Assembly (NCBI RefSeq): GCF_001194135.2
Contig: NC_068981.1
Location: forward strand, 90,418,521-90,477,917
Direction of reading: 5' to 3'
Source of the DNA: Octopus bimaculoides
Lineage: Eukaryota
Length of the DNA stretch: 59,397 nucleotides
Part shown: positions 5,400 through 52,329 of the stretch, one piece after another
Layout of the letters: each line of letters begins with the position of its first letter
Numbering within the stretch: the first letter of the stretch is position 1
Position numbers and translations under genes: made by a program
Notes under the pieces: model-generated
What the model was told of the DNA's origin: nothing
What the model saw: only the letters and a program-made list of their open reading frames with translations
Database searches by the model: none

Positions 5400-6699
5400 T
5401 TTTAGTTAGAGGAAATAGTCATTCTTTTTCAAAGATCATACGGTCGTCAAAGCCGTTACGTTAGCTTCTTAACTAAACACAAGACATAACCTGTTGATCT
5501 TGGGTACCTTTCTCAGGATCCGAGATGTTGAGGTTAACCTTCTTCTATATTCTCACCTTTCACAGAGGAGCTACGAAACATCAGTCCTGGTTTCAAATTT
5601 TTGGCACAAGGCCAGCAATTTCGGGGGAAGGGGATAGTCGATTACATTGACTGGTTCTTATCTTATCGACCTCGAAGGCATATAAGGCAAAGTCGACCTC
5701 AGCAGAATTTGAACTCATAACGTAAAGATGAACGAAACAGTGCTAAGCATTTTGCCAGGCGTACCCGTTTGCCGCCTTGCGAAACAGCAATATTGCTACT
5801 GAAACACTCCACTTCCTTCTTCTACAAAGTTCTTGTTTAATCCGAGGTAAACTCTACTCAAGCGGATTAATAATGATTGACATTCCGCACATAACCATTT
5901 CGTTTTGTTTGCAGAGCCGGCACCAGGATATTCATGCCCTTAGCCAGACCTAAAATATACACCTCCTTTTCTCAGCTGTACAATAAGAGACTACTTTTCC
6001 AATTTGTTTGTTTGTTTCTTTCTTTCTTTTTTTCCTTCTTTTTTTTCTTATTTCATTATATTTATAGGCTCAGGTGTGGCTGTATGGTCAAGAAGTTCGC
6101 TTTGCAACCATATGGTTTTCAGGTTCAATCCAGTTGCGTGACACCTTAGGCAAGAGTCTTCTACTATAACCCCGGATCGACCAATTCCTTGTGGGTAAAT
6201 TTGCTAGGTGGAAACTGTGAAGAAGCACGTCGTATATATCTGTGTCTTTGCGTGTGGTACGCACGCGCGTGTGTTGTCTGTCCCTCACCACTGTTTGACG
6301 ACTGCTGTCGGTTTGCTTACGCCCCCGTAAATTGGCACTTCGTCAAATGACACTGACAAATTCAGAATCAGACTTTAAAAAAAATATGGTAGGTCGATTT
6401 GTTCGACAAAACCCTTCAAGACCGCAATCCAGCATGACCGCAATCCACAAACTGAAACAAATAAAAGACAAATGAAGATCATCATCTAGATATTACCTTC
6501 ATTCACCAGCCAGAAAATGCAGTCGAAAAATGTCTGGTCTTTTTGAGAACTGGTTATTATACATTAACTAGATTTACTTTCCATCGCCGAATAATTATTT
6601 CTAGTCGGCTTTCTATTGCTTCCAACATTAAATATGTTAACCTTAACAAAACTTGTGTATGGCGTCCCTGAATTTTTTGTTTTCTAAATAATTGTATAT

Positions 6700-7810
6700 C
6701 CTTATAAACCCCAATGTAAGATTATGGGCATACCTACACAAATGTGCCCCCCACAGACTTTGTGACGTGTTAGATTCGGCGGCTTTGATCTGTTCTGCAC
6801 CTGGATCTACCGGCCTATTTTCCCCCCAGTCTCCTTCAGCCTCAGCCTCAACTGCGAGATAGTCCACAGATGTCGAACCAGATGTGGCCCAAGAACTGGA
6901 GTTGGCCCGAGCCGATGGGACCGCTGAAGGCCTTGCTCTACCTCCCAGAAAACAGTTGTCCAATGTAACTGGGATGGCATGAGAGGCAAGTCTGCCTTCG
7001 GGTGGATGAGACATCATTTGACCAGCACTACCTCGCTTACCTCCGTTCCACTTCGCAGCCGAACAACAGCGCATAGCTCAATTCGATGCCCTACTCATAC
7101 ACCGGTACCCTTCTAGATGATGGGTACACTTGTATCGGAGTGGCCTAACACCTCAGTCTCCGCGCGTGTGAGCCGCACAAATGCTGTTGTGGTGTGGTAG
7201 TCGATGAATTCGACCTGCATCAATAGCGCGGGCCGATTCCCTCGACACTCCACTCTGAAGGACATTATTAACCGGCTTCCCGTCTCAGCTGGAACCAGTA
7301 GGTCTTGACCGCGTGGACGGTAAGCACCCTGAAGAAATTCCCATTTGAGGGAGGCAACTCGCCAGTCTGGGACGCGACGTGCAGCAACAAATTCTCCGGT
7401 TCCAACCTTGCTGCATTGTCTGAAAACTCGGATATTGCCGCCCGTAACGCAGAAGAGAGGGAAATAAATAAGTATAGAAGCCTGACCGGCTGCTATCAGT
7501 CTGTGCCAGTCGCCATTGAGATCTCGGGTGTTCTCAGACCCTGCACTACCGATTTCCACCGCAAAATCAGGGTAACAGTGGCCCGACTGAGAGATGAACC
7601 CCGCGAGGTGGATTGGCTGCTGCAGCATGTGTCATTGGCCATTCTCCGCAGCAACGTCATCGCGGTCATCACTGCAGGGCGCGGCTGAGCACACCATCAA
7701 TTCTGGGATGTGTTACCCATTCCTCCCTCCGCTTTCTGCCACCTACCCCCTCACACCTATTTTTCTTTTTCTTTGTTTCCTTGCAATTAAACTGTGATTC
7801 AATAAAATTT
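6700..7810 (+). mobile_element. 3' relic of an RLE-type non-LTR retrotransposon (CRE/HERO-like)
   Basis: Degraded LNSMPYSYTGTLLDD..CEPHKCCCG..SAGRFPRH..LEPVGLDRVDGKHP..PVWDATC..KYRSL..PVAIE..VSLAILRSN: Zn-knuckle plus restriction-like endonuclease; several stops and frameshifts. Confidence 0.8.
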
Positions 7811-8375
7811 TGCCATGTCCAAATTTGCTAAGATAAAAATTTAAGTCACATGTATGCGTATATGTGACTTAAATCAAACATTTTAAATTCAGCATTAATA
7901 TCAGCTGTTCAATTAATCAAAAGGAGAAAAACACCAACATTCTCCTCTATTACGACTTCCTCCCAAGCGAAAGGGTTGCTACATAATTGCTGGAACCGCT
8001 AGGAATAGTACCCAAATCTCCCTCAAATAAGACCTCATCCTCTTACAAAAGGAGATATAGATACTTTGGTCCTGAGTTCTCTACACATAAGAAAAAGGCG
8101 AGTGTTCACGGTTGGATTGTCTTTAATCATAGGTCGTAGGCTAGCATTAGACAACTTCCTTACACGTGACAAAATAACAACCGTCAACAAAGTGTTTTCA
8201 AATAGCTAACTGGCGGACAACGCCGAGAATTAGCGACTTTTTATTTAGGGAATATCCACTTTCAATAGATTTTATTCAAAAATTCAAACAAGAATTTTTA
8301 AGCATGTTACTTTAAAAAATATGTATTTTTAATCAGTCGTGTTTATTTAATTGCTCTTTGTTCGTATTAAATAGG

Positions 8376-8457
8376 TTGGCGAAAATTTCGGTTAACTCCG
8401 GAAACTACCGAATCACATTTTCCGTCGTCCACGGTATCAACCGGCGCTAAGTTTGAA
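8376..8457 (+). promoter_or_regulatory. Anillin proximal promoter with CDE/CHR tandem element and E2F-like and Myb-like sites
   Basis: GGCGC-taag-TTTGAA (8443-8457); CAACCG (8438-8443); TTGGCGAAAA (8376-8385); CpG-rich patch ~140 nt upstream of the ATG. Confidence 0.6.
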
Positions 8458-8593
8458 TTAGATAACAGCAAGTATATTTTACCAGTATCTCGAACCTAAT
8501 TAATTATATTCAAATATACTTCTTGTGATTGTTATTTATTATTCAACACAAATCGACAAAAGGTATTCGAGTTCAGTCCCGATATATTACACC

Positions 8594-8611
8594 ATGGATG
8601 AAGAAACACGG
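8594..8611 (+). CDS. ANLN: Anillin exon 1 (MDEETR), phase-0 donor
   Basis: accATG GAT GAA GAA ACA CGG|gtaagt; joins exon 2 in frame to give the conserved anillin N-terminus. Confidence 0.85.
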
Positions 8612-11600
8612 GTAAGTTGGAAAATATAATATGCAAAAAAAGATATTGCCGTGAATATAAATTATGATGAGCCATAAGGCATTGTTTCTGTGTTAATGCA
8701 TCTCCCTCACTCGTTCAGGTTTTCTCTGACTGTCAATATATTATATATACTGTATATATTTAATTTAATTTCACTACTTTTAACTCTCCCACTTTTATAA
8801 GTACCTTTTCCTTATTTTAAATACTTTCTTAAATTTTAAAACTATTAACAGTTTTTAAATGTTTGCTTTCGTTTTTGCTTGACATATTTCCTTTTTTGGA
8901 AACATTTTTTCAGAAAGTTGGAAGTTGATGTTCATGCAAGTTTATTAATAATTTACTAGTTTTAGCTTATTTATTTATCTATTAATATTCAGCTTTAACT
9001 ATTGTCTTACTGTGTTCCTTATATTTGGTTAAGCATAAACATTTTTTCTTTGTAATTTTCTTTTTTTTATTTACACATTTAATTGAATTTAGCAAATTGT
9101 TTCATCAAATTTTGTTTCTGCAACTAATCGTATTTTTCTTCCATCTATATTATTTTTTTCTATATTTATCATTTCAAAACATTAGTAAATATTTTTTTTA
9201 TCTATTTTTTTTTTTTTTGTCTATTCAACGTTGCCTGAATTCATAATTTGAATCGACAACGATTAATTATTATAACATTATTATTCTCGAATTGAGCGCT
9301 GAACATTTTGCAAACAGCTCTTTTTCTTTTCCTAAAACTTTATACATTTTTAACTATGAATTTGTTAAAGATGTTAAATGACAGCTTCTATGATGACAAC
9401 GATTATGATTGCAACTCAGAACGAAAGACTTACACGCGCTCTTTAGCTCCTGTTGCTTCTTCGCCGATACGAGTCGGTGCACGAGCATCTTTTGACAGCC
9501 TTTCCTGGTCACTCTCTACTCAGTCTGATATCACAGAGGTTGATACATCTTGTTCCAGCTTCGTTTGCATCCCAACACAACGTAAGAACTGTTCACCAAA
9601 GGCTAAACGTCGTTCTGATTGTCCCCAACATCCGTCACTCCATAGACCAAATTTCACTATCAAACCACTCTCAATAACCACTAATTATTCGCCATCCTTA
9701 CAGTTAACTGATGGCTCTTCCGTTTTTTACACGCTCAGCAACTGTAATGATTCTTGTCTGACGTCCATCGCTGGCCATGTCGGCTCCGATTGCGAATTTG
9801 AATTCAATATTTCTGATAACAACGAAAAGAATAAATGCCACTCGGTCTTTCGGCTACGAAAAAACTTTGAACGGATGGCAGCTTCTAGTAAAGAAAATCG
9901 TTATGTTTGGGTTGGTATGTTTTTATTTAGATTGAAGTGAATTTAAAACCATTAAGGAAGTCTTAACTCTTGTCGACATTTGTTTTCTGTAGCCCTTATG
10001 TTATTTTTATAAATGCTACTATGACTTAATGTGTCACTCATTTATCGTATATATTGAATAGAAAAGGCAAAATTTGTGTTGGCATGGACAACAACGAAAG
10101 GTTGTTATAAAATTTATTGATTTGTCAGTGTTTGTTACCCTCAGGAATGCATGCCCTGGTTGAGCAGACCTACCAACGGGGTCCCAACCGTGACTGCTCT
10201 GTCCAATGCTAAAGTGCCAATGACGTTCCAATTAAGTCAGGAATTATCTAGTGCGCCATAAATCGCAAGTTCTTTGGTTATGTATATTTTAAGCATTGTA
10301 GATTACATTTTGCCAAATAAAATTCGACTCTATAGTTGGTTAGACCAGGGGTTTTCAAACTTTTTGACTTGCGGACCCCTTTATATTTCAGGCTTTACCT
10401 TAGACACCCTTATAAACGCTTATGAAATTTACACATAATTATTTGCTTAAAATAACATTTTTACATTTATTTATTTAACAGTATTTAACAAATAGGTTTA
10501 TTGTCAATTAAAAGATTTCGATTAAAAAACATATATAAAATCAAATTGCCCATAAAAAGTATTTGCTGTCCACGGACCCCCTGTCTTGTCCTTGCGGACC
10601 ACAGTTTGAAAACCCCTGGGTTAGACTATCTGCCTCCTTTTTCCCGTAATCTTTCAGTTTCGACTTCTTTTTCATATCTACGATTTAAAAAGTTACGCAT
10701 ATATTTGAAGATTCATCGTCCCGAATGTTAAAAAAAAAATTATAACGCAAAAATTAAGCAAAGTCCTCTTCTCCCTTGGATTTGCCCGCCCCCTCCCCCT
10801 GAATCGTAAAACATACACACATCCGTAGAAGTTTTGGATTTTGACGCACAAGATAATTTCCGACTCTCTTCTACAGGAATGCCCAACTGGCCATACTGTC
10901 TGTCATTACTTTTCTGAATCAATAAGTAGTTTGGAGAAAAAAAAATAGCTGTTATTTCTAACTGTTTGAACGACCACTTAGGGGGGTGGGGGGCACTTTT
11001 ATATACATGTAATGCATAACTAAGCTACGAATCCAGGTAAGGTATAATTGCAGTTCAGCTATCTTCCCTGACATTATTTTACCCATAACTCTTTTTTTTT
11101 TAATGTATATTTTAAATGAAAATTTGCAGAGATATGCTCGTGCTGATTAGGAATATCTTGATGAATTCTTTAAAATTATATTATTCAGAAAGAAAAAATA
11201 CGTATTTCTAAACCATTCTTTGTGGATCCTCAGGTGGATTATTAGGCCAATATTAGCACAAAATCTACGGTTACAATAGGGGCACGTTATAGGAGAGTCA
11301 AGACCCAATGGAGCTCTTGCTTTCTGTGGTGCAACATGACATAGAAGTAACTCTGCAGAATATCATCTGCAACACTTAATGTTTTTGTTTTTTTGAATAC
11401 TTGATCTGGATTATTTTAGGCTAATTTCTTTTTAACTCTGACATAATAATATCAATCAGGATAATGTTGTAGATTTAAAAAAAAAAAAAGTTACGTTCTG
11501 CAACGACCACCAAGTTATTGAATGCTGTCTCTGTTCCTTATATCTTTTATAGTTACGGATGACAACAGCTGTCACCCAAGTTTAAAACCACATTTGACCC

Positions 11601-14600
11601 TTTGATCCCTTTTAGTGGAATCCTTTCTGTTGGAAGCATTTGGGGTCAGGGCGGTCCTATACCTCACAGAAGGGAAAAGAGTAGTTTTATTCTTTTTTTT
11701 TTCCTTGTGTGTGTGTTCTTTCACAAACGGAAATTACGATTCAGAAAATAATTTTTTACCAAAAAAAAAAAAATTTTTTAGTTTTCCTTCTAATTTTACC
11801 CCTTCTTCCTTTCATGTGCTTTCCCATGAGATAAGGGTCTTCGAGGGACAGCTAATTCAAAACTCAGGCCTCATCGTGTTTTATGACTTGAAATCTAGTC
11901 AGTTGACTTTTTTTCCCCACTCTTTTGGTGTAGAATACTATATCTAGATCGAATGAATGTGAACTGTTACTCTTCCACTTTTTTGTCTTCTCGGCAGACT
12001 TTCGGAATAGCAAGTGCCTGTTGTTCGGAAGGCACGATGAGGTGGGTGCGACGGCGAGGACAAAATGTTTGAAAAGCATGAATTAAAACTAAACTTTTTT
12101 AAAAAAAGATCCCTATCCCTTTTCCAGTTTCAATGTTCTGAGATGTGAGATACTATAAAATATGGAAAAATCCAGAAAAAAAAAAAAAATTCCGATACTA
12201 TGTGGGACAGCGATTCCGAAAGTTCGTCTTTTCTTAGGTTGAAAATTTAAAATCTATTTAATCTCTTAATTTTTCTGCTCTGTCTGATATTTTTAAACCT
12301 GTTTCTAAAAGGCTGTTTGAACTATTTTTATTTTTGTACTATTTCAGTTAAAAAATAAAAACTCAACAAATAAACAAAACTGCTGTAACCGTTTTATATA
12401 TGCTGTGTGAGGTGTAGACAACAATGTAGACAAGTCCATAGACCCACATACACTCACTATTGTTTATTCTATATATATTTTCTCTCCCACATTTCTGTCC
12501 CTCAGTATTTAGAGTAGCAATAAAGAATTTACTTTTCAGTATCTGGTATTAATTAAAGCAACGAGCTCTATAAATACACACCAACTAGTTTAGAGGAAAC
12601 AATTGCTCAAATGTTGACAAGTTAAAATTTGAATTTCCCTCCCCAACAGTCTGTTGGTGAGAAATCCTGGTCACGTTTATTCCTCGCCTCCTCTGTGAAG
12701 ATAAAATTGTTTATCTTTTCGGCTTTGACCTAATAAGGATGGGCGTTAGAACGTAACCGGTTTTCTCTCATTTGAAAAAAGCAACTGTCATGTTCTCCTT
12801 CAACCTGAAATATTTTGTTTGTTCTTTTCTTAAATATTTCTTTATGTAATATAAACTATTTTAAGCATAACTACAGGGTTGTAGTTATGCCCTAATTTAT
12901 TTGTAGTTTAACTTCTGGACAACGAACAAAAGAATTTTTGTTTTGACGACTACGTCTTTTTTAAGGGGTCACTAAACAGTACTCAGTATGATGGATTTGG
13001 CTGCTCTTTCTAACAAGCAGAATGACCACGTAGTCTCGTTAGTAAAAGAATCTAATTGTAGCATAAGTAAAAATTGAAATGTGCTTTATTAAACATTTTT
13101 CAACTTTTTCTTCTTAATCATAGAACATGTTAATTATGTATTAATGAGTAAGGAGGTAGCAAAGTTATAGTTATTCAAATTAAAGTGTTTATTTTTTTAA
13201 CGAAGTTTTCAAAAGTTCGACATACCGGTGTTTCTCTCCAAAAACCGGTCGGGGAAAGGGGTTAAAAAAGACGTTTCTTCGCAATTTTTTTTTCTTTTTT
13301 TCTTTTTTTTTTTCTTGCTTAAAATATAGTCCAGAGCATTTCCATGGGCACTGTGAATAAGAAAATTAAAAAAAATCCCCTTCAAAACGGAGAAATTGCA
13401 ACTTGGTGTTGACTGCAGCATCAGCCCATATATTATTATTATTATTATTATTATTATTAAGGCGGTGAGCTGGTAGGATCGTTAGCGCACTGGACGAAAT
13501 GCTGAGCGGTATTTCGCCCGTCTCTATGTTCTGAGTTCAAACTCTGCCGAAGTTGACTTTGTCTTTCGTCCTTTCGGGGTCGATTAAATAAGTACCGGTT
13601 ACGCACTGGTGTCGATGTAATCGACTTAATCCCCTCCTACAAGCTACCTTTGAGGCAAAAATTTGAAATCATTAGCAGGAGCAAGTGATTCAAAGATACG
13701 AAACTATAGGCTCTTGAGTCACTCTGTTTTTTTTCTGCTAAACATATATATCTTCGAAACGTCTAGATAGAATAGAGACAGCTGATGAAGGGATATTCCA
13801 AGTGGCTTTCCGTTTTCCTATGTGTTCGTTCCGTTGTCTGTGGTTTATTGTTCTAACGTCCTGTACCCTGATATGCATATATATACACATGTAGATGTAA
13901 GTATGTACATATGTGTGTATACATGTATATATATTCTTTGTATTATTATNNNNNNNNNNNNNNNNNNNNNNNNNNNNNNNNNNNNNNNNNNNNNNNNNNN
14001 CATAGTGAATATTAAAATGGAGGAAGAACAAAGTTTAATTTCAAATACTGTTTTTATACATACACTCATCATCGTCGTTTAACGTCCGCTTTCCATGCTG
14101 ACATGGGTTGGACGGTTTGACTGAGGACTGGTGAGCCAGATGACTGCACCAGGCTTCAATCTGATCTGGCAGAGTTTCTACAGCTGGATGTCCTTCTTAA
14201 CGCCAACCACTCCAAGAGTGTAGTGGGTGTTTTACATGCCACCGGCACGAGAGCCAGTCAAGCAGTACTGGTGACAGCCACACTCAAATGGTGTTTTTTA
14301 TGTACCACCTGCACAGGAGCCAGTCCAGCTTCACTGGCAACGACCTCGAAGACAACAAATTTCCAGCAATTTAATTTTTAGTAATTAAAATAAATCAGAA
14401 GCACTGTTCTAAGCAAAAAAGTGCAAAGCACATCTGAGAAGCAATTATATTGTGTACTCAACTCCCATTTTGCCACCAGCTTTCTTCTATTTCACGGTAC
14501 TACCACCTGTATACTAAACATCACTTCTGATTAGGTGCTGGTGCTATTCAGTGGGACTGAACCTATATAACATCATCAGTAGTTCCCAACCATTTTTTTT

Positions 14601-16717
14601 TTTACCTATAGACCCCTTTGATTTCTGTTTTACTCGAGTGGACCCTCATAGCAGTCATGGCAGATACCGGTGTCATGCAAATGGCACCTGTGCTGCTGGC
14701 ATGTAAAAGCACCCATTACACTCGGAGTGGTTGCTGTTTGGAAGGGCATCCAGCCATAGGAAACCATGCCAAATCAGACTGGAGTCTGGTGCAGTCTTCC
14801 AGCTTACCATCCCTGGTCAAACCATCCAACCCATGCCAGCATGGACAACATATGTTAAATGATGATGTTCTTTGATGCTGAACACATAGTATTAAGTAAA
14901 GACTGGAATTTGCTTGTACATGTTTGCAACCATTAGTTTATAGTTTGTTCCATTTCCATGGAGAGTGAATAATGTAATATTTCAGGCCCTTGCTCTTCAC
15001 CTGTGATCTCATTAGCTGTTAAAACTGGCCAGTTACACACATCCAAGCTTTACTGCAATCTTTTATTAATCCCATTTCCTATAATTTTGAAATCTACATT
15101 CTTTGTTAGCCATTATAAAGGACTTATATTGTTTCATTGTGTATGGCAGAATCAGTACTTCAAACAAAATACTTTACTAAATTTAGTTACATTTATGTTC
15201 CAAGTTTAAATGAAACCCAAGTTGATTTTTGCCTTTCATCCATCTGAGGCCAAGAAAATAAGTGCCACTAATGTACTGGAGTTGATCATAATCCACTATG
15301 GTGGATTGTCAGAAACCACTCGAAGATTAAGAGAATGCATACTCTTTTACTCTTTTACCTGTTTCAGTCATTTGACCGTGGCCATGCTGGAGCACTGCCT
15401 TTAGTCGAGCAAATCGACCCCAGGACTTATTCTTTGTAAGCCTAGTACTTATTCTATCGGTCTCTTTTGCCAAACACACTAGCATCGGTTGTCAAGCGAT
15501 GTTGGGGGGACAAACACACACGCATATATACACATATATATATATATATATATATACGGCGGGCTTCTTTCAGTTTCCGTCTACCAAATCCACTCACAAG
15601 GCTTTGGTCGGCCCAAGGCTATAGTATATAGTAGAAGACACTTGCCCAAGGTGCCTCGCAGTGGGACTGAACCCGGAACTATGTGATTGGTAAGCAAGCT
15701 ACTTACCACACAGCCACTCCTACGCCTCAACAAAAATATATATATTACATGTTTTTTTTTCTTTTAAAATATATATTATTACATGTTCTTTTTATTTTAA
15801 AAGAATGGTTTTTGTCAGATGATTTAATTTTACAACTGGGTGTTCTCCCTGCAGCATATTACCCAATGCTAAATGTACTGAAATAATCTGTCCTTATCAA
15901 TGTATTTTTAAAATAGTGTTATCTAGGATATGTTTGACTTCATGAGTGCAGTTTTAACTGACATTCTTATATTCTAGCTACTAAGCAATGTTGTTAGTCT
16001 GGGGTTTATTGAAGCATTAGGCACCATTATGTTATCTCTGTACATTCATTTGTAACCTCTTTAAGCATTATCATCTTGATTTCAGAATGGTTTGCAAGCA
16101 CACATCATTCTGATTATGTAGTCACGCCAATAAAGTTAATACATTTTTAATTCAGTGGCATCTTAAACCAAAGAAATTATTGCTAAAGTTATTTAACATT
16201 AAATAAGATTACTTAGCATTGAGAAAACTGGAAAATTCTAAAAATTTGTTTGGAGAGCAAGTTTAAATTTATTGATATGAAACCTAAATTTGGTCAGCTT
16301 TCTTGATCAGGGCCATAGTTCAGATCTCTTTATCTCTCTCATATTTATATGTGTGTGTGTGAAGGTCCATGGCTCAGTAGTTAGTGTCGAGCTTACGATC
16401 ATGAAGTTGTGAGTTCAATTCCCGGACCAGGTTGCGTGTTGTGTTCTTGATACTTTTATTTCATGTTGCTCCAGTTTACTCAGCTGTAGAAATGAGTTGC
16501 GACATCACTGGTGCCAAACTGTATTGGCCTTTGCCTTTCCCTTGGATAGCATCAGTTGTGTGGAGAAGGAGGGCTGGTATGCATGGGCGACTGCTGGCCT
16601 TCTACAAATAACCTTGCTCGAATTTGTGCCTCGGAGGGTAACTTTCTGGGTGTAATCCCATGGTCATTCATGACTGGTGGGGTCTCCTCCTCCTCACACA
16701 GACACACACACACACAC

Positions 16718-16762
<45 letters not shown>

Positions 16763-19700
16763 NNNNNNNNNNTAACGTCTAGATATTTTACTCTGGATAA
16801 TTACACTTGTGGTACCAGCTTAAATGAGGTATCATTCCAAAAATTAATATGAAATAAGAGGAAACCTTCATTGAAGTAGTTTTTCTTTCTCTTTATATTT
16901 TGCTATTTAACCAACTAATCTATGCTAACTCTTATAGATTGGGTAAGCTCTAAAGAGATTTAAAAACTTTTTGCTGCTTGAAGTGATTTGGGATGTCATC
17001 CAACTGTAGGGTCATAGGAAAAAGACAAAAGGAAGAAAACCTAATTTCATAGAGATTGCCATATGTTTTACTGCTGGAGAAAGTGGATTGACATTGGTCA
17101 GAGAAGAAGTCACTAAGAAACTAGTGTACATATTCAGATATGTGTTTCATTGATTCATTTATTTACAAGGAAATATGCTGAACAATAAAATAGCTACTAA
17201 ATGCTTGTATTTAAGACAGCTGTTGTTAAATAATCACATCAAATTCAAAAACATTAATATTTATATTCATTAATATCTATATTAAGTTTTCAATAATTTT
17301 GATTTTGTTCATGTCCAACGTATTGTCATCATTATGAATGGAAATTGTTTTCACTTTTTTTTTAGTTTTATTATTACTAATCTTGAACATTGTTTTGATA
17401 AGGTCATGTAAGGTTTATACTGAGGAGGATTCATTTTATCAAACCAAGAAAGTGGACTGGAAATGTTGTCAGATTGAGTTTGTGGTTTGAATGAAATTAA
17501 GTAATCTTATGTAAATTAACTACATACCTTTTAATTGTCTGATGACTTAGTTTTTTTTTTGTCATTTCTAAATATCAGAAAATCATTGAGAGGACTAAAG
17601 AACGAAGAGAGAAGCTGAAAATGATGAGCGAGACAGATGGAACACACAGAAGACGGAGACCTTTGTCTGAAGACATGTCAGCTAACATAGAAACAGTTCA
17701 AGATGATGGTAAGCAGTTATTGCTTTGGTCAATTGTAAAAAAAAAATAGTTTTAATATTCCAATCTCTATAAGATTTGAAATGTCTTTTCTTCTTTTGTT
17801 TTAAGAGTTTGATAAGTTATCTAACTGCTCCAACTAGCACTACCATCACTGGCATTTGGTTTACCAAGTATTGTAATTATGTCAGTTAAACATTTTCATT
17901 CAGATTAGTTTAAGAGATTTTATTATATTGAACTCTATTTTGCATTATTTTGTTATATATAATTTTAGTGTTAAATGATTAATGGGATGGAAGAAATGCA
18001 ATTGTCTTTCAATAAGTACATCTGTCATTCAGAATACTGAATTCAAATCCTATGAAGTTTGATTTTTTTTTTTTTATCTCATGGGGTGGGGTGTGCAAAA
18101 TAAATGAAGTATCAGGCTTGTACTTAGTTGTTTTCAGTAACATTTTCTCCTCGATTTAAATTTGGGGCTTTCAGCTAAGATAAAAAAGAAAATCAATATT
18201 ACTCTTTTACTTGTTTCAGTCATTTGACTGTGGCCATGCTGGAGCACCGCCTTTAGTACTTATTCTATCGGTCTCTTTTGCTGAACTGCTAAGTTACGGG
18301 GACATAAACACACCACCATCAGTTGTCAAGCGATATTGGGGAGACAAATACAGACACACGAACCCACACACACACATGCATACGACTGGCTTCTTTCAGT
18401 TTCCGTCTACCAAATCCACTTACAAGGCTTTGGTCGGCCCGAGGCTATAGTAGAAGACACTTGCCCAAGGTGCCACAGAGTGGGACTGAACCTGGAACCA
18501 TGTGGTTGGTAAGCAAGCTATCAATTTTGACAGCTAAAGCATATCTAAAGTATATCACTTCATAATGATCCTCCTCCCCATTTAAGACTTTAAAAAGGGT
18601 GTGGGAGTGACATGATGAACCAAAAGGAAGCTGCTGGATGAGTTTTACTATAGCCTTTTGCCGGTCATTTTTGAAATGATGTACAGACATAGCTGCAGTA
18701 GTTTATGGTTTGAAATATATTTGATATCAAAGCAAAGAAACTAATGGAATTTACCAGAAGTATAAAACAAAATAGCATCGTATGAATTAATAAATTTGGC
18801 ATAAGTAAACATATCTTCTCTCACTGTGATTAAAGTTTTATGCTATGATTCCAAATTAGAGAGAGTGGTAGTCCAATGACTGAAACAAGTGAAAGATAAA
18901 TGATATAAGGCAGTCAACTGGCAATTGAAATCATATATCTTTCATGTTATAATAAGATTTTAATATTTTTCCTCAAATATGAACACTTAAGTAGGAGCAG
19001 TCTGTAGGGTAATCTATTTACTCTTTACTCTCTCTTTTACTGTTTTACTTGTTTCAGTCATTTAACTGCGGCCATGCTGGAGCACCGCCTTTTAGTCGAG
19101 CAAATTAACTCCAGGACTTATTCTTTGGAAGCCTAGTGCTTATTCTATCGATCTTTTTTGCTGAACCACTAAATTACGGGGACGTAAACACACCAGCATC
19201 AGTTGTCAAGCGATGTTGGGGGATAAACACAGACACACACACACACACACACACATATATATGACGGGCTTCTTTCAGTTTCCGTCTACCAAATCCACTC
19301 ACAAAGCTTTGGTCGGCCCGAGGCTATAGTAGAAGACACTTGCCCAAGGTGCCACGCAGTGGGAATGAACCCGGAACCATGTGGTTGGTAAGCAAGCTAC
19401 TTACCACACAGCCACTCCTGCACCTAATATTTGATAATCATTTTTTTTTTTAATCTAATTTTCACTTCATTATAAAGTGTGCAGGAATGCACTTTTACTA
19501 ATTTTTCTTCATATTTATTAAAGATTCTCCTAAACGTCAGTGTCTCCGATCAGCAGAACAAAATATAAAACCAGATACCCCAGCTATACGCGGTGTACAG
19601 TCGCGGAGAAATGACTTGACTACTCTTTGTCTTAGTTCTGGTGAGTTTTTGAACTTATTTGATGTTTGTAATTGTCATCATCAACATTTAACATCCGTTT

Positions 19701-22700
19701 TCCATGCTGGCATGGGATTTAGATAATATGCTTCCCAATTTTCTTCCGTTACTTTCCCCAATTAGATTTTTGATGTTGCAGACAAAATAAGTTTGCCTTA
19801 TCAAGCAGAGTTCTCTTTTATCCATTTTTGCCTGGCAGAGTTGATTCTGTATAACTCTTCATCTTTGTTTTACTTTTAGATGATGGTGATTATGTACCAG
19901 TCCCAGTACCGCGAAAGTCTCTTTGCCAAGAAGAGAACAGAGATCCTAATCAAGAAGTATTCAAGCCACAGTGTCGCTCTCGTCTGGCTAAACTAGCTCA
20001 GCGTATTAATGCTTGGGATGATGACTATTCAAAACATGAAACAGTTGGGTCAGTTCAACTTCTCACTTATTAAAGTTCCTGCTTAAATATCATCATCATC
20101 ATCATTTAACATTGGTTTTCCATGCTAGCATGAATTTTTAAAACAATATTTTCAATATTCATTTTAAATGACTTTGAAACCTGAATTTGTGCAAGACTGC
20201 AATTTGGAGATGTTACTTCTACTTGTTTCACTCATTAGACTGCAGCCATGCTGGGGTACTGCATGAATGAATCAACCCCAAGACTTATTTTTTAAGCCTG
20301 GTACTTATTCTATTTGTCTCTTTTGCTGAACTGCTAAGTTATGGGAACACACACGCCAACACCAGTTGTCAAGTAATGAGGATGGCGGTTGATACACACA
20401 CACACACACACACACATATATGTGTGTGTGTGTGATTGGCTTCTTTCAGTTTCCATCTACCAAATCCACTCAAGATTTTGGTCAGCCTGAGGCTATAGTA
20501 GAAGACACTTGCTCAAGATGCCATGCAGTGGGACTGAACCCAGAACCATGTGGTTGGGAAGCAAGCTTTTTATCACACAGCCACACCTGTTCAACTGTAT
20601 TATGAATATTGTATGCATTTTCCAGCTAGTAGTAGTAGTAGTAGTAGTAGTATGGAAAGCAGAATAATGTGATTAATTTCAAGACTTAAGACAGTTCCTG
20701 AGGTACTGTTTAATCTTAAAATCAGTACATCAGCATTGTCACTATCCTTGTCTTTTGATGTCCATCTTTTATATTGGCATGGATTGGACAGTTTGAGAGG
20801 ATGCAATGGGTCCAAGGACTGTCATATTCCAGTGTCTGCTTTGACATGGTTTCTACAGCTGGATGCCCTTCTTAATGCCAACCAATTTACAGAGTATACT
20901 GGATATTCTTTTTATGTGACATTGGTACTAGTGAGGTTGCTGTGGAGCTCTCAAGACTAAGATCTCTTGACTGAGTGAGGCGCTACAATTAAGAAAGGCG
21001 ACTTTATGTTAAGAGATGAGAAATTAGGAGCTACATGGCATCTCACACTATGGAAGAGTGGGTGGAAGTAACCAGAATGGAGCTAGGGGAAAAGAGAGAG
21101 AGATAAAAGTGTTAGTGTCAGGGTAGACCCTAAAGGTATAAGATGAAGAGGAGTGGGCACAGAACAGGGATTGAGTGTGGGTAGAGGTTACAAGTGTATG
21201 AACAGAGTGAAGGATGGTTAAAAATGGGGAATGGTTGAGGAGCAAACATGAAGAACAAGTGTTATTCACAATATGTTCACAATCTTTCACAGAAGATTGT
21301 GAACATATTACACCTTTTGTATGAAGGTTACTTTTGATTGCAATTAATCTACACATATCAAGATGAGGGTATGCACACTAGTGCACATACATACAAATAT
21401 GACAAGCTAGTTTCTGTCCACCAAATTTCATGCATCAGGATTGTTCAACTCAAGACCATAGTAGAAGTCATTGCGTCCACAATGGGAGTTTTGTCATGCT
21501 ACTGGCACCAGAAAGGTGTCTAGCATTACTCAATTTCTCCTTCTACATTGTATCAATTATTATTGAAAGTTATTAACCCATTACCTCTCATAATTCTTTT
21601 AACTGGAATTTAATAGAAACACGCTGGAATGATCAAAATAACATTTTAAATAGAAATAAGTGAGATATTGGGAGAAAAATTAGCAAACCTCATTTGAATA
21701 TCAGAGAAATATACCTAGTTGATATAGCCAAAAGTTTAGATATGTGTAAATATTGACAGATAATTACGAAATTTGTAATTTTTAAGTGATCTCATATGAG
21801 ATCACTGGTAGGTAATGGGTTAATGTATGAGATGTGGTGTTCCACTGGAGCTTGCAAAGTCCATCTCTTCTCCATGCGATATGAGCCACTCTTAATTCAC
21901 ATGCTGCTGAGTTTGCTCAGTGTCTTACTTTCTAGGCAGGTCGCTCACTATGGCTGAAAAGTCATATCTCTCCATGCTGCTGCTAAGAGATTTCATAGTA
22001 TTGAGGCAGACTGAAAGAGGAAGGGAACCTGCAGTAGTAGTCTGATGAAGGATAAGACTTTTTCCATGACTTAGATTAAGAGTGGCAGCTAAACTTAGTT
22101 TAGTAAGAATGATGTGAGATGGGATCCCAACCAAACTATCTAGATATATTCATTTAACATGTTCAAACACTGATAATAAGAAGTATTTACATAGATGAAA
22201 AGAGTAATCATCATGCACCCTGCTTTGTAACTTCAACTCTTCGTTGAACATAGCTGTTTGACAAAAACTGTATTTGACTGAATGAGAAATTGACATGATT
22301 CATGATTGACTCTTGAGGATTTTGTCTTCATTTCACAACTGAGTAGTTTAGCTTCTACAAGGGTATTACTGTATATCTCTGTTCAGAAAAATTCTTTAAA
22401 AATTTATGTAGGTATCTGGATTTGCAGATGTAGTCAAACCATGCAAACAGAATGACATATGTTAAAAATATTAAAATCATGCTACAAAACAACATACATT
22501 AAAAATATTTGAAAAAATATAAGTCTTAAGTGTCAGACATAATGATTTTTTTTTTTTTTTTCTTTTAGCTTATTTAGTCGACCCAACTCAGTTCATTCAG
22601 TTGACAGGGAACGTGACATACCAATGACCACTGCTTTTACTGAAGTGCCACTTGAAACTAGGGATTCTCGGTCAAGGTCTGCTGCTCCAGTGGCCCCTCA

Positions 22701-25700
22701 TATGAGGTCTCCTCGCTCCAAATCTGCTGCACCCATAGCATCTGCACCTGCAACACCTGTACCAGTGCGTTCAAAGTCTCCTGGTCCTTCATATGCTCCG
22801 AGATCTCCAGCACCTGTTGCTCCACGTCTTATGCCAAGTGATGACTTAGAAACAGCTATTGAGACTATGTCAAGGCAGCAGAAGCCATTAAGAAACAACA
22901 AAAAGATCCCTTATACTGCCAAAGGTAGTGGTCATGACCATTTGCAGGATATTCCCAGTGGAATACCTGTTAATGCTCGGGGGCTTAATGATTCCTTAAC
23001 TCAAGGTGAAACCACAGATGATGAACCAACTAACAAACCAGTCTCTGAGCGATTGGCTAAATGGTCAAAGAAAGTATCTGCAACAGAAATTAACTGTGCT
23101 AGTCCTTCTAAAAGTGAAAATACTCAGCCAAATTCTAAAACCACTACTCCTATGGGCAATAGATGCAGCCAGAACTTGTCATCAAAAGTTGCTCAACTCG
23201 AAAAGAGCCTCGGGATTTCATCTACGCCAAAACAAAACAGAGCTGCATTTAGCAATCAACAGTCTTCCCAGTCATCAGGTTCTTCTTCAGTGCAGATTAA
23301 CAGTGTATCGTCGAGTGCACCGTCATCAGCAACACACAATACTCCTGCGGCTGAACCTATAAATGGGAAAAATAAACAGGGTAACAAGCGCCGTGAGAGT
23401 TTTGAACCAACAAGCCAGTCAGTTTCTGAAAGAATGGCTGAATGGCAAAAGAAAGTCAACACTCTTGAAGCGGTGACTGAGAAAGAACCAACCGCTTATC
23501 CAGTAAATGCTCGCATGTCTGCATGGGAACAGGTGACTGCCAGTGGGAGTACTGAATCCAACAAAATGATTAAGCCTAAAGGTACTACATTACCTTGTCC
23601 TACTACAACACCTTCGAGACCAGTGTCTGCAAATATTCCCACAAGTGCTTGCATTCCCAAATCTCCTGGAATGGCAAGGAAATTCGAATCTCCTGTTGTC
23701 AAATCTAATTCTGTTGATGCTAAATCTAAGCCTCTGAGTCCTTCAAAAGCCAGCTGTGCCATGAAAGCTATTCAACAGCGCTTATTTGAAACTCAACAGA
23801 GTACCACCACTCAGTCATTGGCTGAAAGAATTCGGCAGGAACGAATGGCTGAGCTGAAAGTACTTGAAAATCGATGGCATAATGGTATCTTAAAAGATAA
23901 CACTGTGGTGAGTGTCTTACTTTTCCATCAATTAATATTGTATATTATAATTAGAATTGATGTTTATCCTAAGCTTGCCTACATCAAAAGCATTCCTGCT
24001 GTGAATGTCTTTATATATTTATTTCATCATCATCGTCGTCGTCGTCGTTTAACGTCCGCTTTTCATGCTAGCATGGGTTGGACGATTTGACTGAGGACTG
24101 GTGAAACCAGATGGCAACATCAGGCTCCATTCTGATTTGGCAGAGTTTCTACAGCTGGATGTTCTTCCTGACGCCAATCACTCAGAGAGTGTAGTGGGTG
24201 CTTTTACGTGCCACCGGCACGAAGGCCAGTCAGGCGGTACTGGCAACGGCCACGCTCAAAATGGTGTATTATATGTGCCACCCGCACAAGAGCCAGTCCG
24301 CAATGGACTACATTAACCAATGTTTTTTCAAACTTTTTTTTAAGGCAATAAAGTATAGTTTGAGGCAGATTTGACTGCTACTTCTAGTAAGTTGAGCAAC
24401 AACATAGAGGATTCCTCTTTGGCTTGTTGAATGGTAATGTTAAAAACAGTTACGTTGCTTAGGACATTTTACTGTGACTAGTTCAATATTTCAATGCTTT
24501 TAGTTCAAATCTTGTCAGTTAATTTATTATTTTCATTATTCTGGAGTTATAATATTTGTGAACTAGTGTTAATTTAAGTGATTTTGTATCTCCCCTGCAA
24601 AGAATTGGCACAATGAGTCCATTGGAAATATATATATATATATTGTGAATGTGTACTTTTATATTTATATTCATCTATATTGTCTTCTATTTTTTAACTT
24701 GGGTTCTTCTGCCATTAAAAATTTATGAGTCTGATACAGCTCTCCGGATGATGATATATATATAAAATGTGGCTTAATTTAATTATTTAAAATTTTATGT
24801 TGCAGAAATCTGACCAAGAAAGTGATGTCAATGAACCTTCTGGTGAGTATTATTACTTTTAATGAATTTTACTTTGTGTTTTTGATACCTGTTCTATAAA
24901 CTGGGGGTAGTGGTGGAATGAATGTGGATTATAGCTATCAATAGAAATTTTGGAAATGACCTTAAATATATGTATCTCTTGGCCATGGTACACATTATCT
25001 CTCTAACTGTTAATTTTAAAGTTTATTGCTTTTGAGATAGCCAGCTGCTTACAATCACAATACAGATGGTATGCAGTTGGCTAGGTCTTCTTTTCAATAC
25101 CCTTACTGTAACTCAGCATTCAGTTACCACATTTAAACCAGTCTTTACTTACCCAGATTACTCAACTTCAGATCTACAAGTCTTAGTGGAACTGAAAATA
25201 TCATAGTCACTGTTCCATCCCTCTAAATTCATTTGTAAAAACGAGACAAGACTATTCATTGCAATATGGTTAGAAAACGAAGTGTGTTACTGTCCCTTGG
25301 AATATCAACTCTTGTTGATGTTGTTACAATTTGTTGTATTATTTTCTTCCTCTAGCAACTGTACCTAATGAAAAAAAGACTGGACAGATGGTAGCAACAA
25401 GTGGAATACCACCACCACCACCACCATCACTGCCAGCACTGAGCAAAACAACAGCCTCTGCAACTAGCTCCAAGACGACTACAACTGCTTCTACTGGAGA
25501 GAGTAGTAGTATATTCAAACTGGTTGCAGTCCCAGAGAAGAAGTCTGCTCTAGTAAATTCAGAGGATACTCCTTTGAAAAGTGTAGTTAAGCAAGTTCGT
25601 TTTGAGGACAGCTTTGAAAGTTCAGATGACTATTATGGATATGGACAGTAAGTGTTCTATTTTATAAATTTGTTTGTTTTTATCTTGCACTTTCTTAATA

Positions 25701-28700
25701 TTGGTTTCGAATTTTGTCAAGGCCTGCAATTTTAGGTGAATGGGTTAAGTCAATTAAATCTATACCAGTGGTCAATTGATACTTATTTTATTGCTCCATG
25801 GCAGAATTTGAACACAAAACGTAAAGATGGGCAAAATGCCACTAAGCATTTTGTCCGGTATGCTAACAGTTCTGGTTGAAAGAATGTTCTGAATTATTGT
25901 TGAACCATACTCATAGCAGACATTCCAAATCAATGAAGGTTTGTGGTGAAATGATCAAATCAGACTTGATATTGTTGGACCACAGTGACATGCACAAAAC
26001 ATCCCTCCAGGGTCAGTAAAATAATGTACCAGTCATGTACTAGGGCTGATGGTATCAACAAACATCCTTCTCTCAAAATTGTTGGCCTTGTACCTAAATC
26101 ATCATCATTGTTTAACGTCCGCTTTCCATGCTAACATGGGTTGGACGAGTTGACTGAGGACTGGTGAACCAGGTGGCTACACCCGGCTCCGATCTGATCT
26201 GGCAGAGTTTCTACAGCTGGATGCCCTTCCTAATGCCAACCACTCAGAGAGTGTAGTGGGTGCTTTTACGTGCCACCGGCACGAAGGCCAGTCAGGCGGT
26301 ACTGGCGACGGCCACGCTCATAATGGTGTATTTTACGTGCCACCTGCACAGGAGTCAGTCCAGCGGCACTGGCAACGATCTCACTCAAATGTCTTTTCAC
26401 GTGCCAGGAACGTGAAGCTGTAGCACAAGTTTCGCGTTCCTGGCACTCGTGGCGGTGGCACGTGAAAAGATATTCGAGATGCTTCACATTTCTTCCAGCT
26501 CTTTGCTCTGAATGCAAATCTTACCATAGTCAACTTATTTTATCAACCACTGAAAGGATGAGACAGAGTACCAGTTGAGCACTGGGATTAAAGTAACAGA
26601 CTCCTTTCCCTTAAAATTGCTGACCTTGTACCAAAATTTGAAACAAAGATTATTAGGCCTTGTGCCTATAGTAGAATTACTATTATTTTTATTATTTTAG
26701 AAGGCAATGAGCTGGCAGAATCATTAGCATGCCAGACGAAATGCTTAGTGGTATTTCACCTATTGCTACGTTCTCAGTTCAAATTCCCCTGAGGTAGACT
26801 TTGCTTTTCATCATTTCAGGGTCAATAAATTAAGTACCAGTGAAACACTGGGGTCAATGTAATCTACTAGTCCTCTCCCTGCAAATTTCCAGCTTTGTGA
26901 CTTTAATAGAAAGAATTATTGTTATTATTATTTAATTTGATTATTTTTATTTATTTACAGTTATCAAGAATCCAGCATTGATGATATCAGCGATGAGACT
27001 GATGCAGAAAGAACCCTCGAGTCTCATCAAGACTTACAGTACATGGAGCAAGATTTTGAGGACGATTATTATTCCAGCAGTGAAGAGAACGAAGCCCTGT
27101 GCCGTGCTGCAGCTGCACAAAACAACATGTCCCATCCCGACAATGATGAGAGTGATGACGTCAGCATCAGTGCCTTCGTCCCAGAATCTGTGCGTCAGCA
27201 ATACAAGCTTTCTTTGCAAACAGAAAGCTCCACTAATATTATTGAACTGGCCAAACGCCAACAGCACCTGGAGAAAAGCAAAAATCGCAAATACCAGCCT
27301 CATGATAATATAGACAGTACCGATGACACTTTGGATGAAGACTACGATAGCGATGAGATGGAATCTATGGCAACTACGAGTGTGGACGACTTGATTGATG
27401 ATGCTTTGGACTCGGATACAGATGACAATAGACTCCAAACAACCCCGATTCAATCAGCTGTTAGTGATGGTTTTGTTTTTTGTCCCTTTCTTCTTAGGTT
27501 CCATCATACTGCACAGCACCTTTGCACCAGTGCCTTCTATAGCTCTGGACCAAACAAGGTTTTGTGAATGGATTTGGTAGATGGAAACTGAAAAAATGCC
27601 CATTGTATGTGTTTGTGTGTGTGTGGTTGGCATTAGGAAGGCCATTCACCTGTCAAAAAAAAACGTACCAAAACAAACAGTGGAGCTCGGTGCAGTCCTC
27701 TGGCTTGCCAGCTCCTGTCAAACCGTCCAACCCATGCCAGCATGGAATATAGATGTTTGATGATGATGATTGATATATATATATATGTATGTATAAAAAA
27801 ATAAAATTTAGGAAATGGAGATGTAGCATTAATATAATCTAAACTGTAAGAGAATATGTTGGATTTTTGCAGTTGATAAATTGTATTAATTGCTACATCT
27901 CCATTTTCTGAATTTTATTTTGAATAAACCAAGATTTATACTTAGACCTATTTTTTTATGAATACCACTATTCACAAAAAAAAAAAACACTAGGCAATGA
28001 ACCAGTAATTCATTCGATATATTTTTATCCTTTAATGTGGCTATTTTAACCCCTAATTGAATAAATATATATATATATATTGAACTCTCCTATTAACAGA
28101 TGAGGGTTCTGTAATTTCTTGCATAACAACCACACCAATGATTTGTTTATAGTGATCAAATGTTTGTGTTTATATAAGCTCACTCCTTCCATCAAATCAA
28201 CGTTAGCTGTACAGGTGCACAAGTGTGTCAGATGTCGAAATGATTGCCGAGCAGTGTGAAATGAAGTGTTTTGCTGCCCATTCCAGGAATCTAGCTGATT
28301 TCACAATTGTGAGCCCAACATTCTACCACCTGTCCATGCACCTAGTCATTATGAATGTGTGTGTGTGTGTTATTGTCTCCTTGTCTTGACTTAGCATGGT
28401 AGTTGTCAAATGCATGTCACCGTCATGCAAGTAGTCTTTTGTTTACAATCTTGTGAGGAGATACTATCTTAGAAACCAGTCAGAATTGGTGACAGAAAGG
28501 GCGTCCAGCTATAGGAAATCTGCCTCAACAAATTCCATCTGACCCGTTCTAGTGTGAAAAAGTGAACATTAAATGATTATGATGTGCATTCATGCACGGC
28601 TACTTCAATATACTTATGCAGTTCAAAACATGAATACAGTAAGCAGCTTGGTTCTGGGTTCAGCCTCACTGCATGGCACCTTGGGTAAGTGTCTTCTACT

Positions 28701-52260: not shown

Positions 52261-52329
52261 TTGTCTAAACTTAGCTAGTTACTAAATCTAAGAGACTCAG
52301 AACAAATGGTTCACTTGAGGGTGCACCAC

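What the first reader, a model, noticed from the sequence alone, without database searches (positions are those of the whole stretch)
9356..12041. Hidden two-exon alternative N-terminus for anillin inside intron 1
Seen: a ~190-codon ORF ([14 protein letters not shown].., S/T/C-rich) sits in an otherwise AT-rich intron and ends at a phase-1 donor (TTG|gtatgt, 9915). A 44-nt segment (11998-12041) has a strong pyrimidine acceptor and a GAG|gtgggt donor and converts phase 1 to 0 without a stop. Splicing 9914>11998 and 12041>17579 gives ..[36 protein letters not shown], a ~200-aa leader replacing MDEETR. Skipping directly to exon 3 (phase 1) is also in frame and would delete the conserved KIIERT segment. 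Established: anillin N-termini carry formin/myosin/actin-binding elements, and N-terminally different anillins (C. elegans ANI-2) act at germline bridges. Inference: a second promoter makes a tissue-specific (e.g. germline) anillin isoform that I do not recognise as described.
Basis: partly seen in the sequence, partly recalled or inferred. Interest (0 to 1): 0.78.

Follow-up and report, generated by a model that had tools for sequence, protein, structure and literature searches.

The report
Conserved hidden coding exon in anillin intron
A 181-codon open reading frame inside the first intron of an anillin gene is a real coding sequence kept by selection in a second species.

Summary
Every sequence fact in the finding checks out: the ORF, the TTG|GTATGT phase-1 donor at 9914/9915, the 44-nt segment 11998-12041, and the in-frame joins.

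The ORF is not chance. Its only relative in about 15 billion proteins lies on an orthologous genomic contig of a related species. That comparison shows:
- dN/dS of 0.24, with differences of 10/10/28 by codon position
- three indels, all multiples of 3, against 8 of 61 in the flanks
- 21 amino-acid changes, against 33 ± 3 expected if neutral (0 of 5000 simulations)

The conserved start is ATG 9371, not 9356. The donor is conserved. The ORF is single-copy in the window and has no detectable domain or fold.

A direct join to constitutive exon 2 frameshifts (…VWVENH*). An in-frame anillin fusion therefore needs the 44-nt micro-exon or skipping of exon 2. The micro-exon has the second-strongest splice signals of 6140 AG..GT pairs in the intron. 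Its frame fit alone has about 0.15 chance probability, and its conservation could not be tested.

No transcript data were reachable. The second promoter and germline specificity remain speculation. A stand-alone nested gene (189 aa, stop at 9938) is a live rival. Interest is modest.

The parts
8594..8611 (+). Canonical anillin exon 1 coding part, MDEETR|gtaagt, donor in phase 0
   Evidence: Conserved in the orthologous contig L001 with one synonymous change. [19 protein letters not shown] matches the MYQQLLERTRLRKERL start of bivalve anillin P0003.
9356..9370 (+). Window-specific in-frame extension (MNLLK). This first ATG is not conserved.
   Evidence: L001 has ATA at this position and an in-frame TAA further upstream.
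9371..9914 (+). Conserved coding exon: 181 codons plus 1 base, from conserved ATG (MLNDSF…) to the phase-1 donor TTG|GTATGT
   Evidence: 84% amino-acid identity to P0001 on the local alignment of the 201-aa query. dN/dS 0.24. Differences by codon position 10/10/28, p=3e-4; indels of 21, 3 and 3 nt only. Neutral simulation 0/5000. GC 42.7% against AT-rich flanks. Single copy in the window.
9915..9940 (+). Either the first 26 nt of an intron (GTATGT…) or a read-through tail (G)MFLFRLK plus TGA stop if the ORF is not spliced
   Evidence: Positions 9914-9940 are identical in L001 except for one change that is synonymous in the ORF frame. Divergence rises right after the TGA. The first 27 nt after the exon 1 donor are equally conserved, so this does not decide the question.
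11998..12041 (+). Candidate 44-nt micro-exon (D)[14 protein letters not shown] that converts phase 1 to phase 0
   Evidence: Crude PWM scores: acceptor 8.8 bits, donor 10.5 bits, rank 2 of 6140 pairs in the intron. One of 3 pairs reaching 19 bits on the + strand of the whole window, with none on the - strand. After exon 1 (phase 0) its inclusion would frameshift exon 2. Conservation not testable, because L001 ends near 11328.
17579..17708 (+). Anillin exon 2 ([13 protein letters not shown]…VQDD, phase 0 to 1)
   Evidence: A direct ORF-to-exon-2 join gives …VWVENH*.
19880..20048 (+). Anillin exon 3 with a phase-1 acceptor, in frame with the 9914 donor
   Evidence: The frame is confirmed by 45% identity over 53 aa to bivalve anillin P0003. 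The donor TGG|GTCAGT scores 5.5 bits.

Best explanation
Shown:
- Window 9371-9914 (+) is a genuine protein-coding exon found so far only in this lineage. It sits inside intron 1 of an anillin gene, on the same strand.
- It has a conserved ATG and a conserved GT donor in phase 1.
- It encodes a Ser-rich sequence with no detectable domain or confident fold, probably disordered.

Inferred:
- It is most likely an alternative 5' coding exon of anillin transcripts.
- Its phase-1 donor cannot join exon 2 in frame. The most economical in-frame route goes through the 44-nt micro-exon 11998-12041 (phase 1 to 0) into exon 2.
- That route gives an anillin in which MDEETR is replaced by a leader of about 196 aa. 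The leader is 181 aa from the conserved ATG plus 15 aa across the micro-exon. The conserved [13 protein letters not shown] segment and everything downstream are kept.
- Where transcription starts, and in which tissue, is unknown.
For: Coding constraint:
- The only homologue, P0001, lies on genomic contig L001 (Logan assembly of SRR11869391). L001 is colinear with window 6692-11328 and includes anillin exon 1.
- dN/dS is 0.24 with dS 0.25.
- Differences by codon position are 10/10/28, binomial p=3.3e-4.
- ORF divergence is 9.2%, against 14-18% in the flanks.
- All 3 ORF indels are multiples of 3, against 8 of 61 in the flanks.
- A neutral simulation gives 33.3±2.8 amino-acid changes against 21 observed, 0/5000.
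- The ATG at 9371 and the sequence GGGTTG|GTATGT are identical in both species.
- GC content equals that of the anillin coding exons.

Link to anillin:
- Same strand, 760 bp downstream of exon 1.
- The donor score of 5.4 bits equals that of the real exon 3 donor, 5.5 bits.
- The micro-exon has the 2nd-best combined splice signals of 6140 pairs. The other two pairs of that strength in the window include a genuine anillin exon, 39447-39533.
- The micro-exon has the one length class (2 mod 3) and an open frame that restore the exon 2 frame.
- It makes sense only behind a phase-1 donor, because after exon 1 it would frameshift.
Against: - No transcript, junction, CAGE or peptide evidence of any kind.
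- The ORF-to-exon-2 join is out of frame, which is unusual for an alternative first exon.
- The frame fit of the micro-exon has about 0.15 chance probability. A coarse filter found 1-2 compatible candidates in the control phases too.
- Conservation of the micro-exon could not be tested, because L001 stops at about 11328 and the fishing search failed.
- The other top-scoring pseudo-exon (10877-11036) has stops in all frames and its donor is not conserved. Strong signals alone therefore do not prove use.
- The splice PWMs were written from general consensus values, not trained on this organism.
- The ORF reads through 8 more conserved codons to a conserved TGA, so an unspliced product is possible.
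- The comparison rests on only two species.
Confidence: 0.4

Rival explanations
1. Independent nested gene. The ORF is translated without splicing from its own small mRNA (CDS 9371-9940, 189 aa, ending …[11 protein letters not shown]). It merely resides in anillin intron 1. The GT at 9915 is a chance donor-like site.
For: - The read-through tail and the TGA are conserved, with one synonymous change, and divergence jumps just after the stop.
- The donor is only 5.4 bits. An equally good GT lies inside the ORF at 9581, and 22 of 442 intronic GTs score as well.
- The phase mismatch with exon 2 is what an unrelated gene would give 2 times in 3.
- A highly conserved block at 10030-10118 holds a conserved TATAAA at 10106, followed by a drop in identity. 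This could be a 3' UTR end.
Against: - There is no conserved canonical AATAAA or ATTAAA downstream.
- The first 27 nt after the exon 1 donor are just as conserved, so tail conservation is not diagnostic.
- From general knowledge, same-strand nested coding genes are much rarer than alternative 5' exons.
- The exon-grade, frame-restoring micro-exon would then be a coincidence with p of about 0.15.
Confidence: 0.25
2. Alternative 5' exon spliced directly from 9914 to exon 3 (19880). This skips exon 2 and the micro-exon, and gives an anillin that lacks the conserved [13 protein letters not shown]…VQDD segment.
For: The join is in frame (…[17 protein letters not shown]…). The exon 3 frame is verified by homology. 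No unverified exon is needed.
Against: It needs a constitutive exon with normal signals, and a micro-exon with very strong signals, both to be skipped. Phase compatibility alone has a one-in-three chance.
Confidence: 0.12
3. Alternative 5' exon spliced to exon 2 out of frame. The locus then produces a short separate protein (184 aa from ATG 9371, …VWVENH*), with the anillin exons acting as a long 3' UTR. Such a transcript would probably be subject to nonsense-mediated decay.
For: Exon 2 is the default acceptor for any upstream donor. The translation stops 3 codons into exon 2. Purifying selection on the ORF does not require a fusion to anillin.
Against: A premature stop far upstream of many junctions normally destabilises the mRNA (general knowledge). 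The strong micro-exon lies in between.
Confidence: 0.1
4. Cassette exon. Exon 1 (8611, phase 0) is spliced to an acceptor at 9370|9371, and the exon continues to exon 3, giving MDEETR-MLNDSF… This exon would be mutually exclusive with exon 2, since both run from phase 0 to phase 1.
For: The join is in frame. The AG at 9369-9370 is conserved in L001. Its phase class is the same as exon 2.
Against: The acceptor is very poor: pyrimidine content 0.5 and a PWM score of -6.0 bits. The conserved ATG right after it argues for a start codon.
Confidence: 0.04
5. Non-functional chance ORF or fragment of a dispersed repeat.
For: No Pfam, PDB or other homologue. The AlphaFold model has pLDDT 29. Only two species were compared.
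Against: dN/dS 0.24, third-position excess, in-frame indels only, 0/5000 neutral simulations. There is no second copy in the 59-kb window and no transposon-like protein match among 1.84 billion representatives.
Confidence: 0.04

Closest known systems
Alternative first (5') coding exons and alternative promoters that give N-terminal protein isoforms (general class)
   Same: An ATG-initiated exon inside intron 1, on the host strand, with a conserved donor. It would replace the short canonical exon 1 coding part (MDEETR).
   Different: It is not in frame with the common second exon. It needs a 44-nt phase-correcting micro-exon or skipping of exon 2. No promoter or transcript evidence was available.
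C. elegans ANI-2, the short anillin of germline intercellular bridges (PMC4085705)
   Same: An anillin form with a different N-terminus and a specialised role.
   Different: The paper describes ANI-2 as a shorter anillin that lacks the N-terminal myosin- and actin-binding domains. From my own knowledge it is encoded by a separate gene. The candidate here would add about 196 aa and keep all anillin domains. No homology exists between the ORF and any anillin.
Lineage-restricted (orphan) genes nested in introns
   Same: No homologue outside one close relative among about 15 billion proteins. Low-complexity, probably disordered product. Located inside a host intron. Stop codon shortly after the putative donor.
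   Different: It is on the same strand as the host and carries a conserved donor-like site that is phase-compatible with host exons. No conserved canonical poly(A) signal was seen.
Frame-correcting micro-exons or poison exons
   Same: 44 nt with very strong splice signals. Frameshifting if included after exon 1, frame-restoring after the ORF exon.
   Different: Its use is entirely unverified and its conservation is untested.

Membership tests
Protein-coding exon under purifying selection | Open frame retained in an orthologous locus of another species | tested here: met
   P0001/L001: frame open over the full length, indels of 21, 3 and 3 nt only. P(no stop) under neutrality is 0.13. P(3 of 3 indels in frame) is about 0.002, using the flank indel spectrum of 8/61.
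Protein-coding exon under purifying selection | dN/dS well below 1 and excess of third-position changes | tested here: met
   dN/dS 0.24. Differences 10/10/28. 21 amino-acid changes against 33.3±2.8 expected, 0/5000 simulations.
Anillin gene (host locus) | Homology of neighbouring exons to known anillins | tested here: met
   Large exon 22624-23994 against Tegillarca granosa 'Anillin N-terminal domain-containing' protein P0003, E=2.8e-25. Exon 3 shows 45% identity over 53 aa. There is a weak PH-domain hit at 40870-41061, 20.6 bits against a cut-off of 25.1.
Alternative N-terminal isoform of anillin | Exon lies within the gene on the coding strand with a usable donor | tested here: met
   + strand. 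Donor TTG|GTATGT is conserved. It scores 5.4 bits, similar to the exon 3 donor at 5.5.
Alternative N-terminal isoform of anillin | Reading frame continuous into the next constitutive exon (exon 2) | tested here: not met
   The direct join gives …VWVENH*.
Alternative N-terminal isoform of anillin | Some in-frame route into anillin coding exons exists | tested here: met
   Via 11998-12041 into exon 2, or directly into exon 3.
Alternative N-terminal isoform of anillin | Spliced transcripts joining the exon to anillin exons | not testable with these tools
   No transcriptome of this lineage was reachable. The protein collections hold no close relative of this anillin. Exact look-ups were empty.
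Alternative N-terminal isoform of anillin | Own promoter or transcription start upstream of 9371 | not testable with these tools
   Only a conserved 35-nt block at 9277-9312 was seen. No CAGE or ATAC data.
Real micro-exon (11998-12041) | Splice signals of exon grade | tested here: met
   Rank 2 of 6140 pairs in the intron. One of 3 pairs reaching 19 bits on the + strand and 0 on the - strand. The PWM is crude.
Real micro-exon (11998-12041) | Frame compatibility beyond chance | tested here: inconclusive
   It is compatible, but the chance probability is about 0.15. Control phases give 1-2 candidates under a coarse filter.
Real micro-exon (11998-12041) | Conservation in related species | not testable with these tools
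   L001 ends at about window 11328. The fishing search found nothing.
Dispersed repeat or transposon-derived ORF | Multiple copies, or homology to transposon proteins | tested here: not met
   Single copy in the window. No relative among 1.84 billion representatives except the orthologue; P0002 is a spurious repetitive hit. This was tested in the 59-kb window only, not genome-wide.

The most novel reading that the evidence does not exclude
A young protein-coding sequence restricted to this lineage was recruited as an N-terminal leader of about 196 aa for anillin. A dedicated 44-nt micro-exon exists only to restore the reading frame. The result is a second anillin isoform, possibly tissue-specific, that keeps all cytokinesis domains but carries a new disordered Ser/Cys-rich head.
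Probability: 0.3. Interest if true: 0.5.

Novelty: new member of a known kind. Interest (0 to 1): 0.38.

Why it matters
Anillin is the central scaffold of the cytokinetic ring, and its N-terminus holds the binding sites for the contractile machinery. A conserved leader specific to this lineage could change where or when the protein acts.

If the ORF is instead a nested orphan gene, it is an example of a young gene held under selection inside a host intron.

Either way the exon is likely to be missed by homology-based annotation. The comparative evidence here shows it deserves a gene model. The biological importance is modest until transcripts are seen.

Tried and rejected
1. Annotated isoforms. 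A search with ORF plus micro-exon and an exhaustive profile search found only the orthologous ORF, P0001. P0002 is a repetitive spurious hit. A search with the large anillin exon showed that the collections contain no close relative of this anillin. Absence of an annotated isoform is therefore uninformative.

2. Fishing for related-species contigs over the micro-exon. I used a concatenation of six-frame open segments from 11459-12253. No hit.

3. Exact look-ups of the window ORF with three start variants. Not on record.

4. Metagenome scan with the ORF alignment. Nothing.

5. Domain, structure and fold. No Pfam match, no PDB match, AlphaFold2 pLDDT 29. The model was too poor to justify a fold search.

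6. Literature. Nothing for SRR11869391 and nothing relevant for anillin plus octopus. No description of an alternative first exon of anillin.

7. Conservation of the 27 nt after the donor as a test of read-through against splicing. Rejected, because the start of intron 1 after exon 1 is equally conserved.

8. Phase-0 donor at 9910 (TGG|GTTGGT), which would join exon 2 in frame. Considered and rejected: 3.0 bits with T at +3.

9. Dispersed-repeat explanation. Rejected.
Full report
**The locus.** The window is a draft eukaryotic sequence with N gaps. An anillin gene lies on the + strand.
- Exon 1 ends its coding part at 8594-8611 (MDEETR|gtaagt, phase 0).
- Exon 2 is 17579-17708 ([13 protein letters not shown]…VQDD, phase 0 to 1).
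- Exon 3 starts at 19880 in phase 1.

Three results support the anillin identity:
- The large exon 22624-23994 hits a bivalve 'Anillin N-terminal domain-containing' protein at E=2.8e-25.
- Exon 3 aligns to the same protein at 45% identity over 53 residues.
- The canonical N-terminus resembles the MYQQLLERTRLRKERL start of that protein.

I could not verify the organism.

**Check of the observation.**
- The ORF starts at 9356 and covers 186 codons up to a G at 9914, followed by GTATGT.
- The 44-nt segment 11998-12041 sits behind a long pyrimidine tract plus CAG and ahead of GTGGGT.
- The spliced product …[36 protein letters not shown] is as stated.
- The alternative join to exon 3 is in frame.
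- The ORF is 42.7% GC, like the anillin coding exons (43.1%) and unlike its flanks (24-36%).

**Is the ORF real?** A word-indexed search of 5.8 billion proteins found one relative, P0001. An exhaustive profile search of 1.84 billion cluster representatives found the same one. A second hit, P0002, is a repetitive artefact.

P0001 sits on a 4153-bp genomic contig, L001, from the Logan assembly of SRR11869391. L001 is colinear with window 6692-11328 and contains the orthologous anillin exon 1. It is therefore the same locus in a related species, with dS of about 0.25.

The ORF shows the hallmarks of coding constraint:
- Divergence is 9.2%, against 14-18% in the surrounding non-coding DNA.
- It has only three indels, of 21, 3 and 3 nt. 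In the flanks only 8 of 61 indels are multiples of three.
- The 48 substitutions fall 10/10/28 over the codon positions, binomial p=3.3e-4.
- dN/dS is 0.24.
- I simulated 48 substitutions drawn from the flank mutation spectrum. This gave 33.3±2.8 amino-acid changes against 21 observed, and never reached 28 third-position hits, in 5000 runs.

The ORF is single-copy in the window, so the dispersed-repeat escape is not supported.

The first ATG (9356) is ATA in L001, with an in-frame TAA further upstream. The conserved start is ATG 9371. The stretch GGGTTG|GTATGT is identical in both species.

The product has no Pfam or PDB relative and no confident predicted fold (pLDDT 29). It is 17% serine, which fits a disordered region or a young protein.

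**What is it joined to?** This is the weak point, and no transcript evidence could be reached. The protein collections contain no close relative of this anillin at all. Exact look-ups of the window ORF were empty. A fishing search over the micro-exon region returned nothing, and so did a metagenome scan. What follows therefore rests on sequence logic.

1. The default join of an alternative first exon, to exon 2, is out of frame and stops after three codons (…VWVENH*).

2. The join to exon 3 is in frame, but it requires skipping a constitutive exon.

3. The 44-nt segment restores the frame into exon 2. I scored all 6140 AG..GT pairs of 20-300 nt in 9915-17578 with simple consensus-derived matrices. 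This pair ranks second, with an acceptor of 8.8 bits and a donor of 10.5 bits.
   - Over the whole window only three pairs reach 19 bits on the + strand, and none on the - strand. One of the three is a genuine-looking anillin exon at 39447-39533.
   - The signals are therefore exon-grade.
   - Having the right length class and an open frame has a chance probability of about 0.15. An earlier coarse filter gave 1-2 compatible candidates for the control phases too.
   - The other top candidate (10877-11036) has stops in every frame and its donor is not conserved in L001. Strong signals alone are therefore not proof of use.
   - After exon 1 the micro-exon would frameshift exon 2. It yields a sensible protein only behind a phase-1 donor such as 9914.

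4. The 9914 donor scores 5.4 bits. That is low, but equal to the real exon 3 donor at 5.5 bits. A similar site lies inside the ORF at 9581.

**The main rival.** The frame runs on for eight codons past 9914 to a TGA at 9938. This tail is conserved except for one synonymous change, and divergence rises immediately after the stop.

A highly conserved block at 10030-10118 contains a conserved TATAAA. An unspliced nested gene encoding 189 aa is thus possible.

Against it, no canonical poly(A) signal is conserved. Also, the first 27 nt after the exon 1 donor are just as conserved, so the tail argument has no power.

**Weighing.** From general knowledge, alternative 5' exons are far more common than same-strand nested coding genes. 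That favours a link to anillin. The phase mismatch with exon 2 counts against it. The exon-grade, frame-restoring micro-exon counts for it.

My estimates are:

| Model | Probability |
|---|---|
| ORF exon, then micro-exon, then exon 2 | 0.40 |
| Stand-alone nested gene | 0.25 |
| Direct join to exon 3 | 0.12 |
| Out-of-frame join to exon 2, making a short separate protein | 0.10 |
| Cassette exon | 0.04 |
| Chance ORF | 0.04 |

That the ORF is a genuine coding sequence I hold at about 0.9.

**Comparison with the known.** This is the ordinary class of alternative 5' coding exons, or alternatively an intron-nested orphan gene. The ANI-2 analogy is weak. The paper describes ANI-2 as a shorter anillin lacking the N-terminal myosin- and actin-binding domains (PMC4085705), and from my own knowledge it is a separate gene. 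This exon would add a leader and keep everything else. I found no paper describing such an exon.

**Verdict.**
- Novelty is a new member of a known kind.
- Interest is modest (0.38).

Noticed in passing
window 10345-10619: A 275-bp MITE-like insertion with perfect 17-nt terminal inverted repeats (CCAGGGGTTTTCAAACT). It is absent from the orthologous contig L001, so it was inserted after the two species split, or was lost in the other species.
   Followed up: partly
window 10877-11036: The strongest splice-signal pair in intron 1 (160 nt, 22.3 bits). It has stop codons in all three frames, and in L001 it carries a 13-nt deletion and has lost the donor. It is probably a pseudo-exon or a species-specific non-coding or poison exon.
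   Followed up: partly
window 10030-10118: An intronic block conserved at about 93-95% with L001, higher than the ORF itself. It contains a conserved TATAAA at 10106, and identity drops after about 10120. It could be a regulatory element or the end of a short 3' UTR.
   Followed up: no
window 13429-13637, 14066-14347, 14682-14867, 15340-15760: SINE-like dispersed repeats. They have many copies at 70-88% identity, in both orientations, in other introns of the window (for example 18199-18520, 19032-19451, 24036-24299, 26099-26382, 47437-47718).
   Followed up: partly
window 50986-53611 (- strand): GC-rich stretch (45-53%) with long minus-strand ORFs of 241 and 211 aa. By eye the first carries an integrase-like motif (DNGTAF…YQPSGNGVVERHH). 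This suggests a retroelement insertion, but Pfam gave no hit at E<=0.01.
   Followed up: partly
window 6600-7700: GC-rich region (43-49%) upstream of anillin exon 1 with overlapping ORFs on both strands (7113-7628 on -, 7305-7688 on +). It is conserved at 72-92% in L001, with no Pfam hit. It may be an old transposon fragment or promoter-proximal sequence.
   Followed up: no
window 9183-9275: A 93-bp T-rich segment just upstream of the ORF that has no counterpart in L001. The spacing between the conserved intron sequence and the ORF therefore differs between the species. The 35 nt that follow (9277-9312, …TGAGCGCTGAACATTTTGC) are well conserved.
   Followed up: no
window 39447-39533: An 87-nt exon candidate ([29 protein letters not shown]) with very strong splice signals. 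It is probably a genuine C-terminal anillin exon and served as a positive control for the splice scan.
   Followed up: partly
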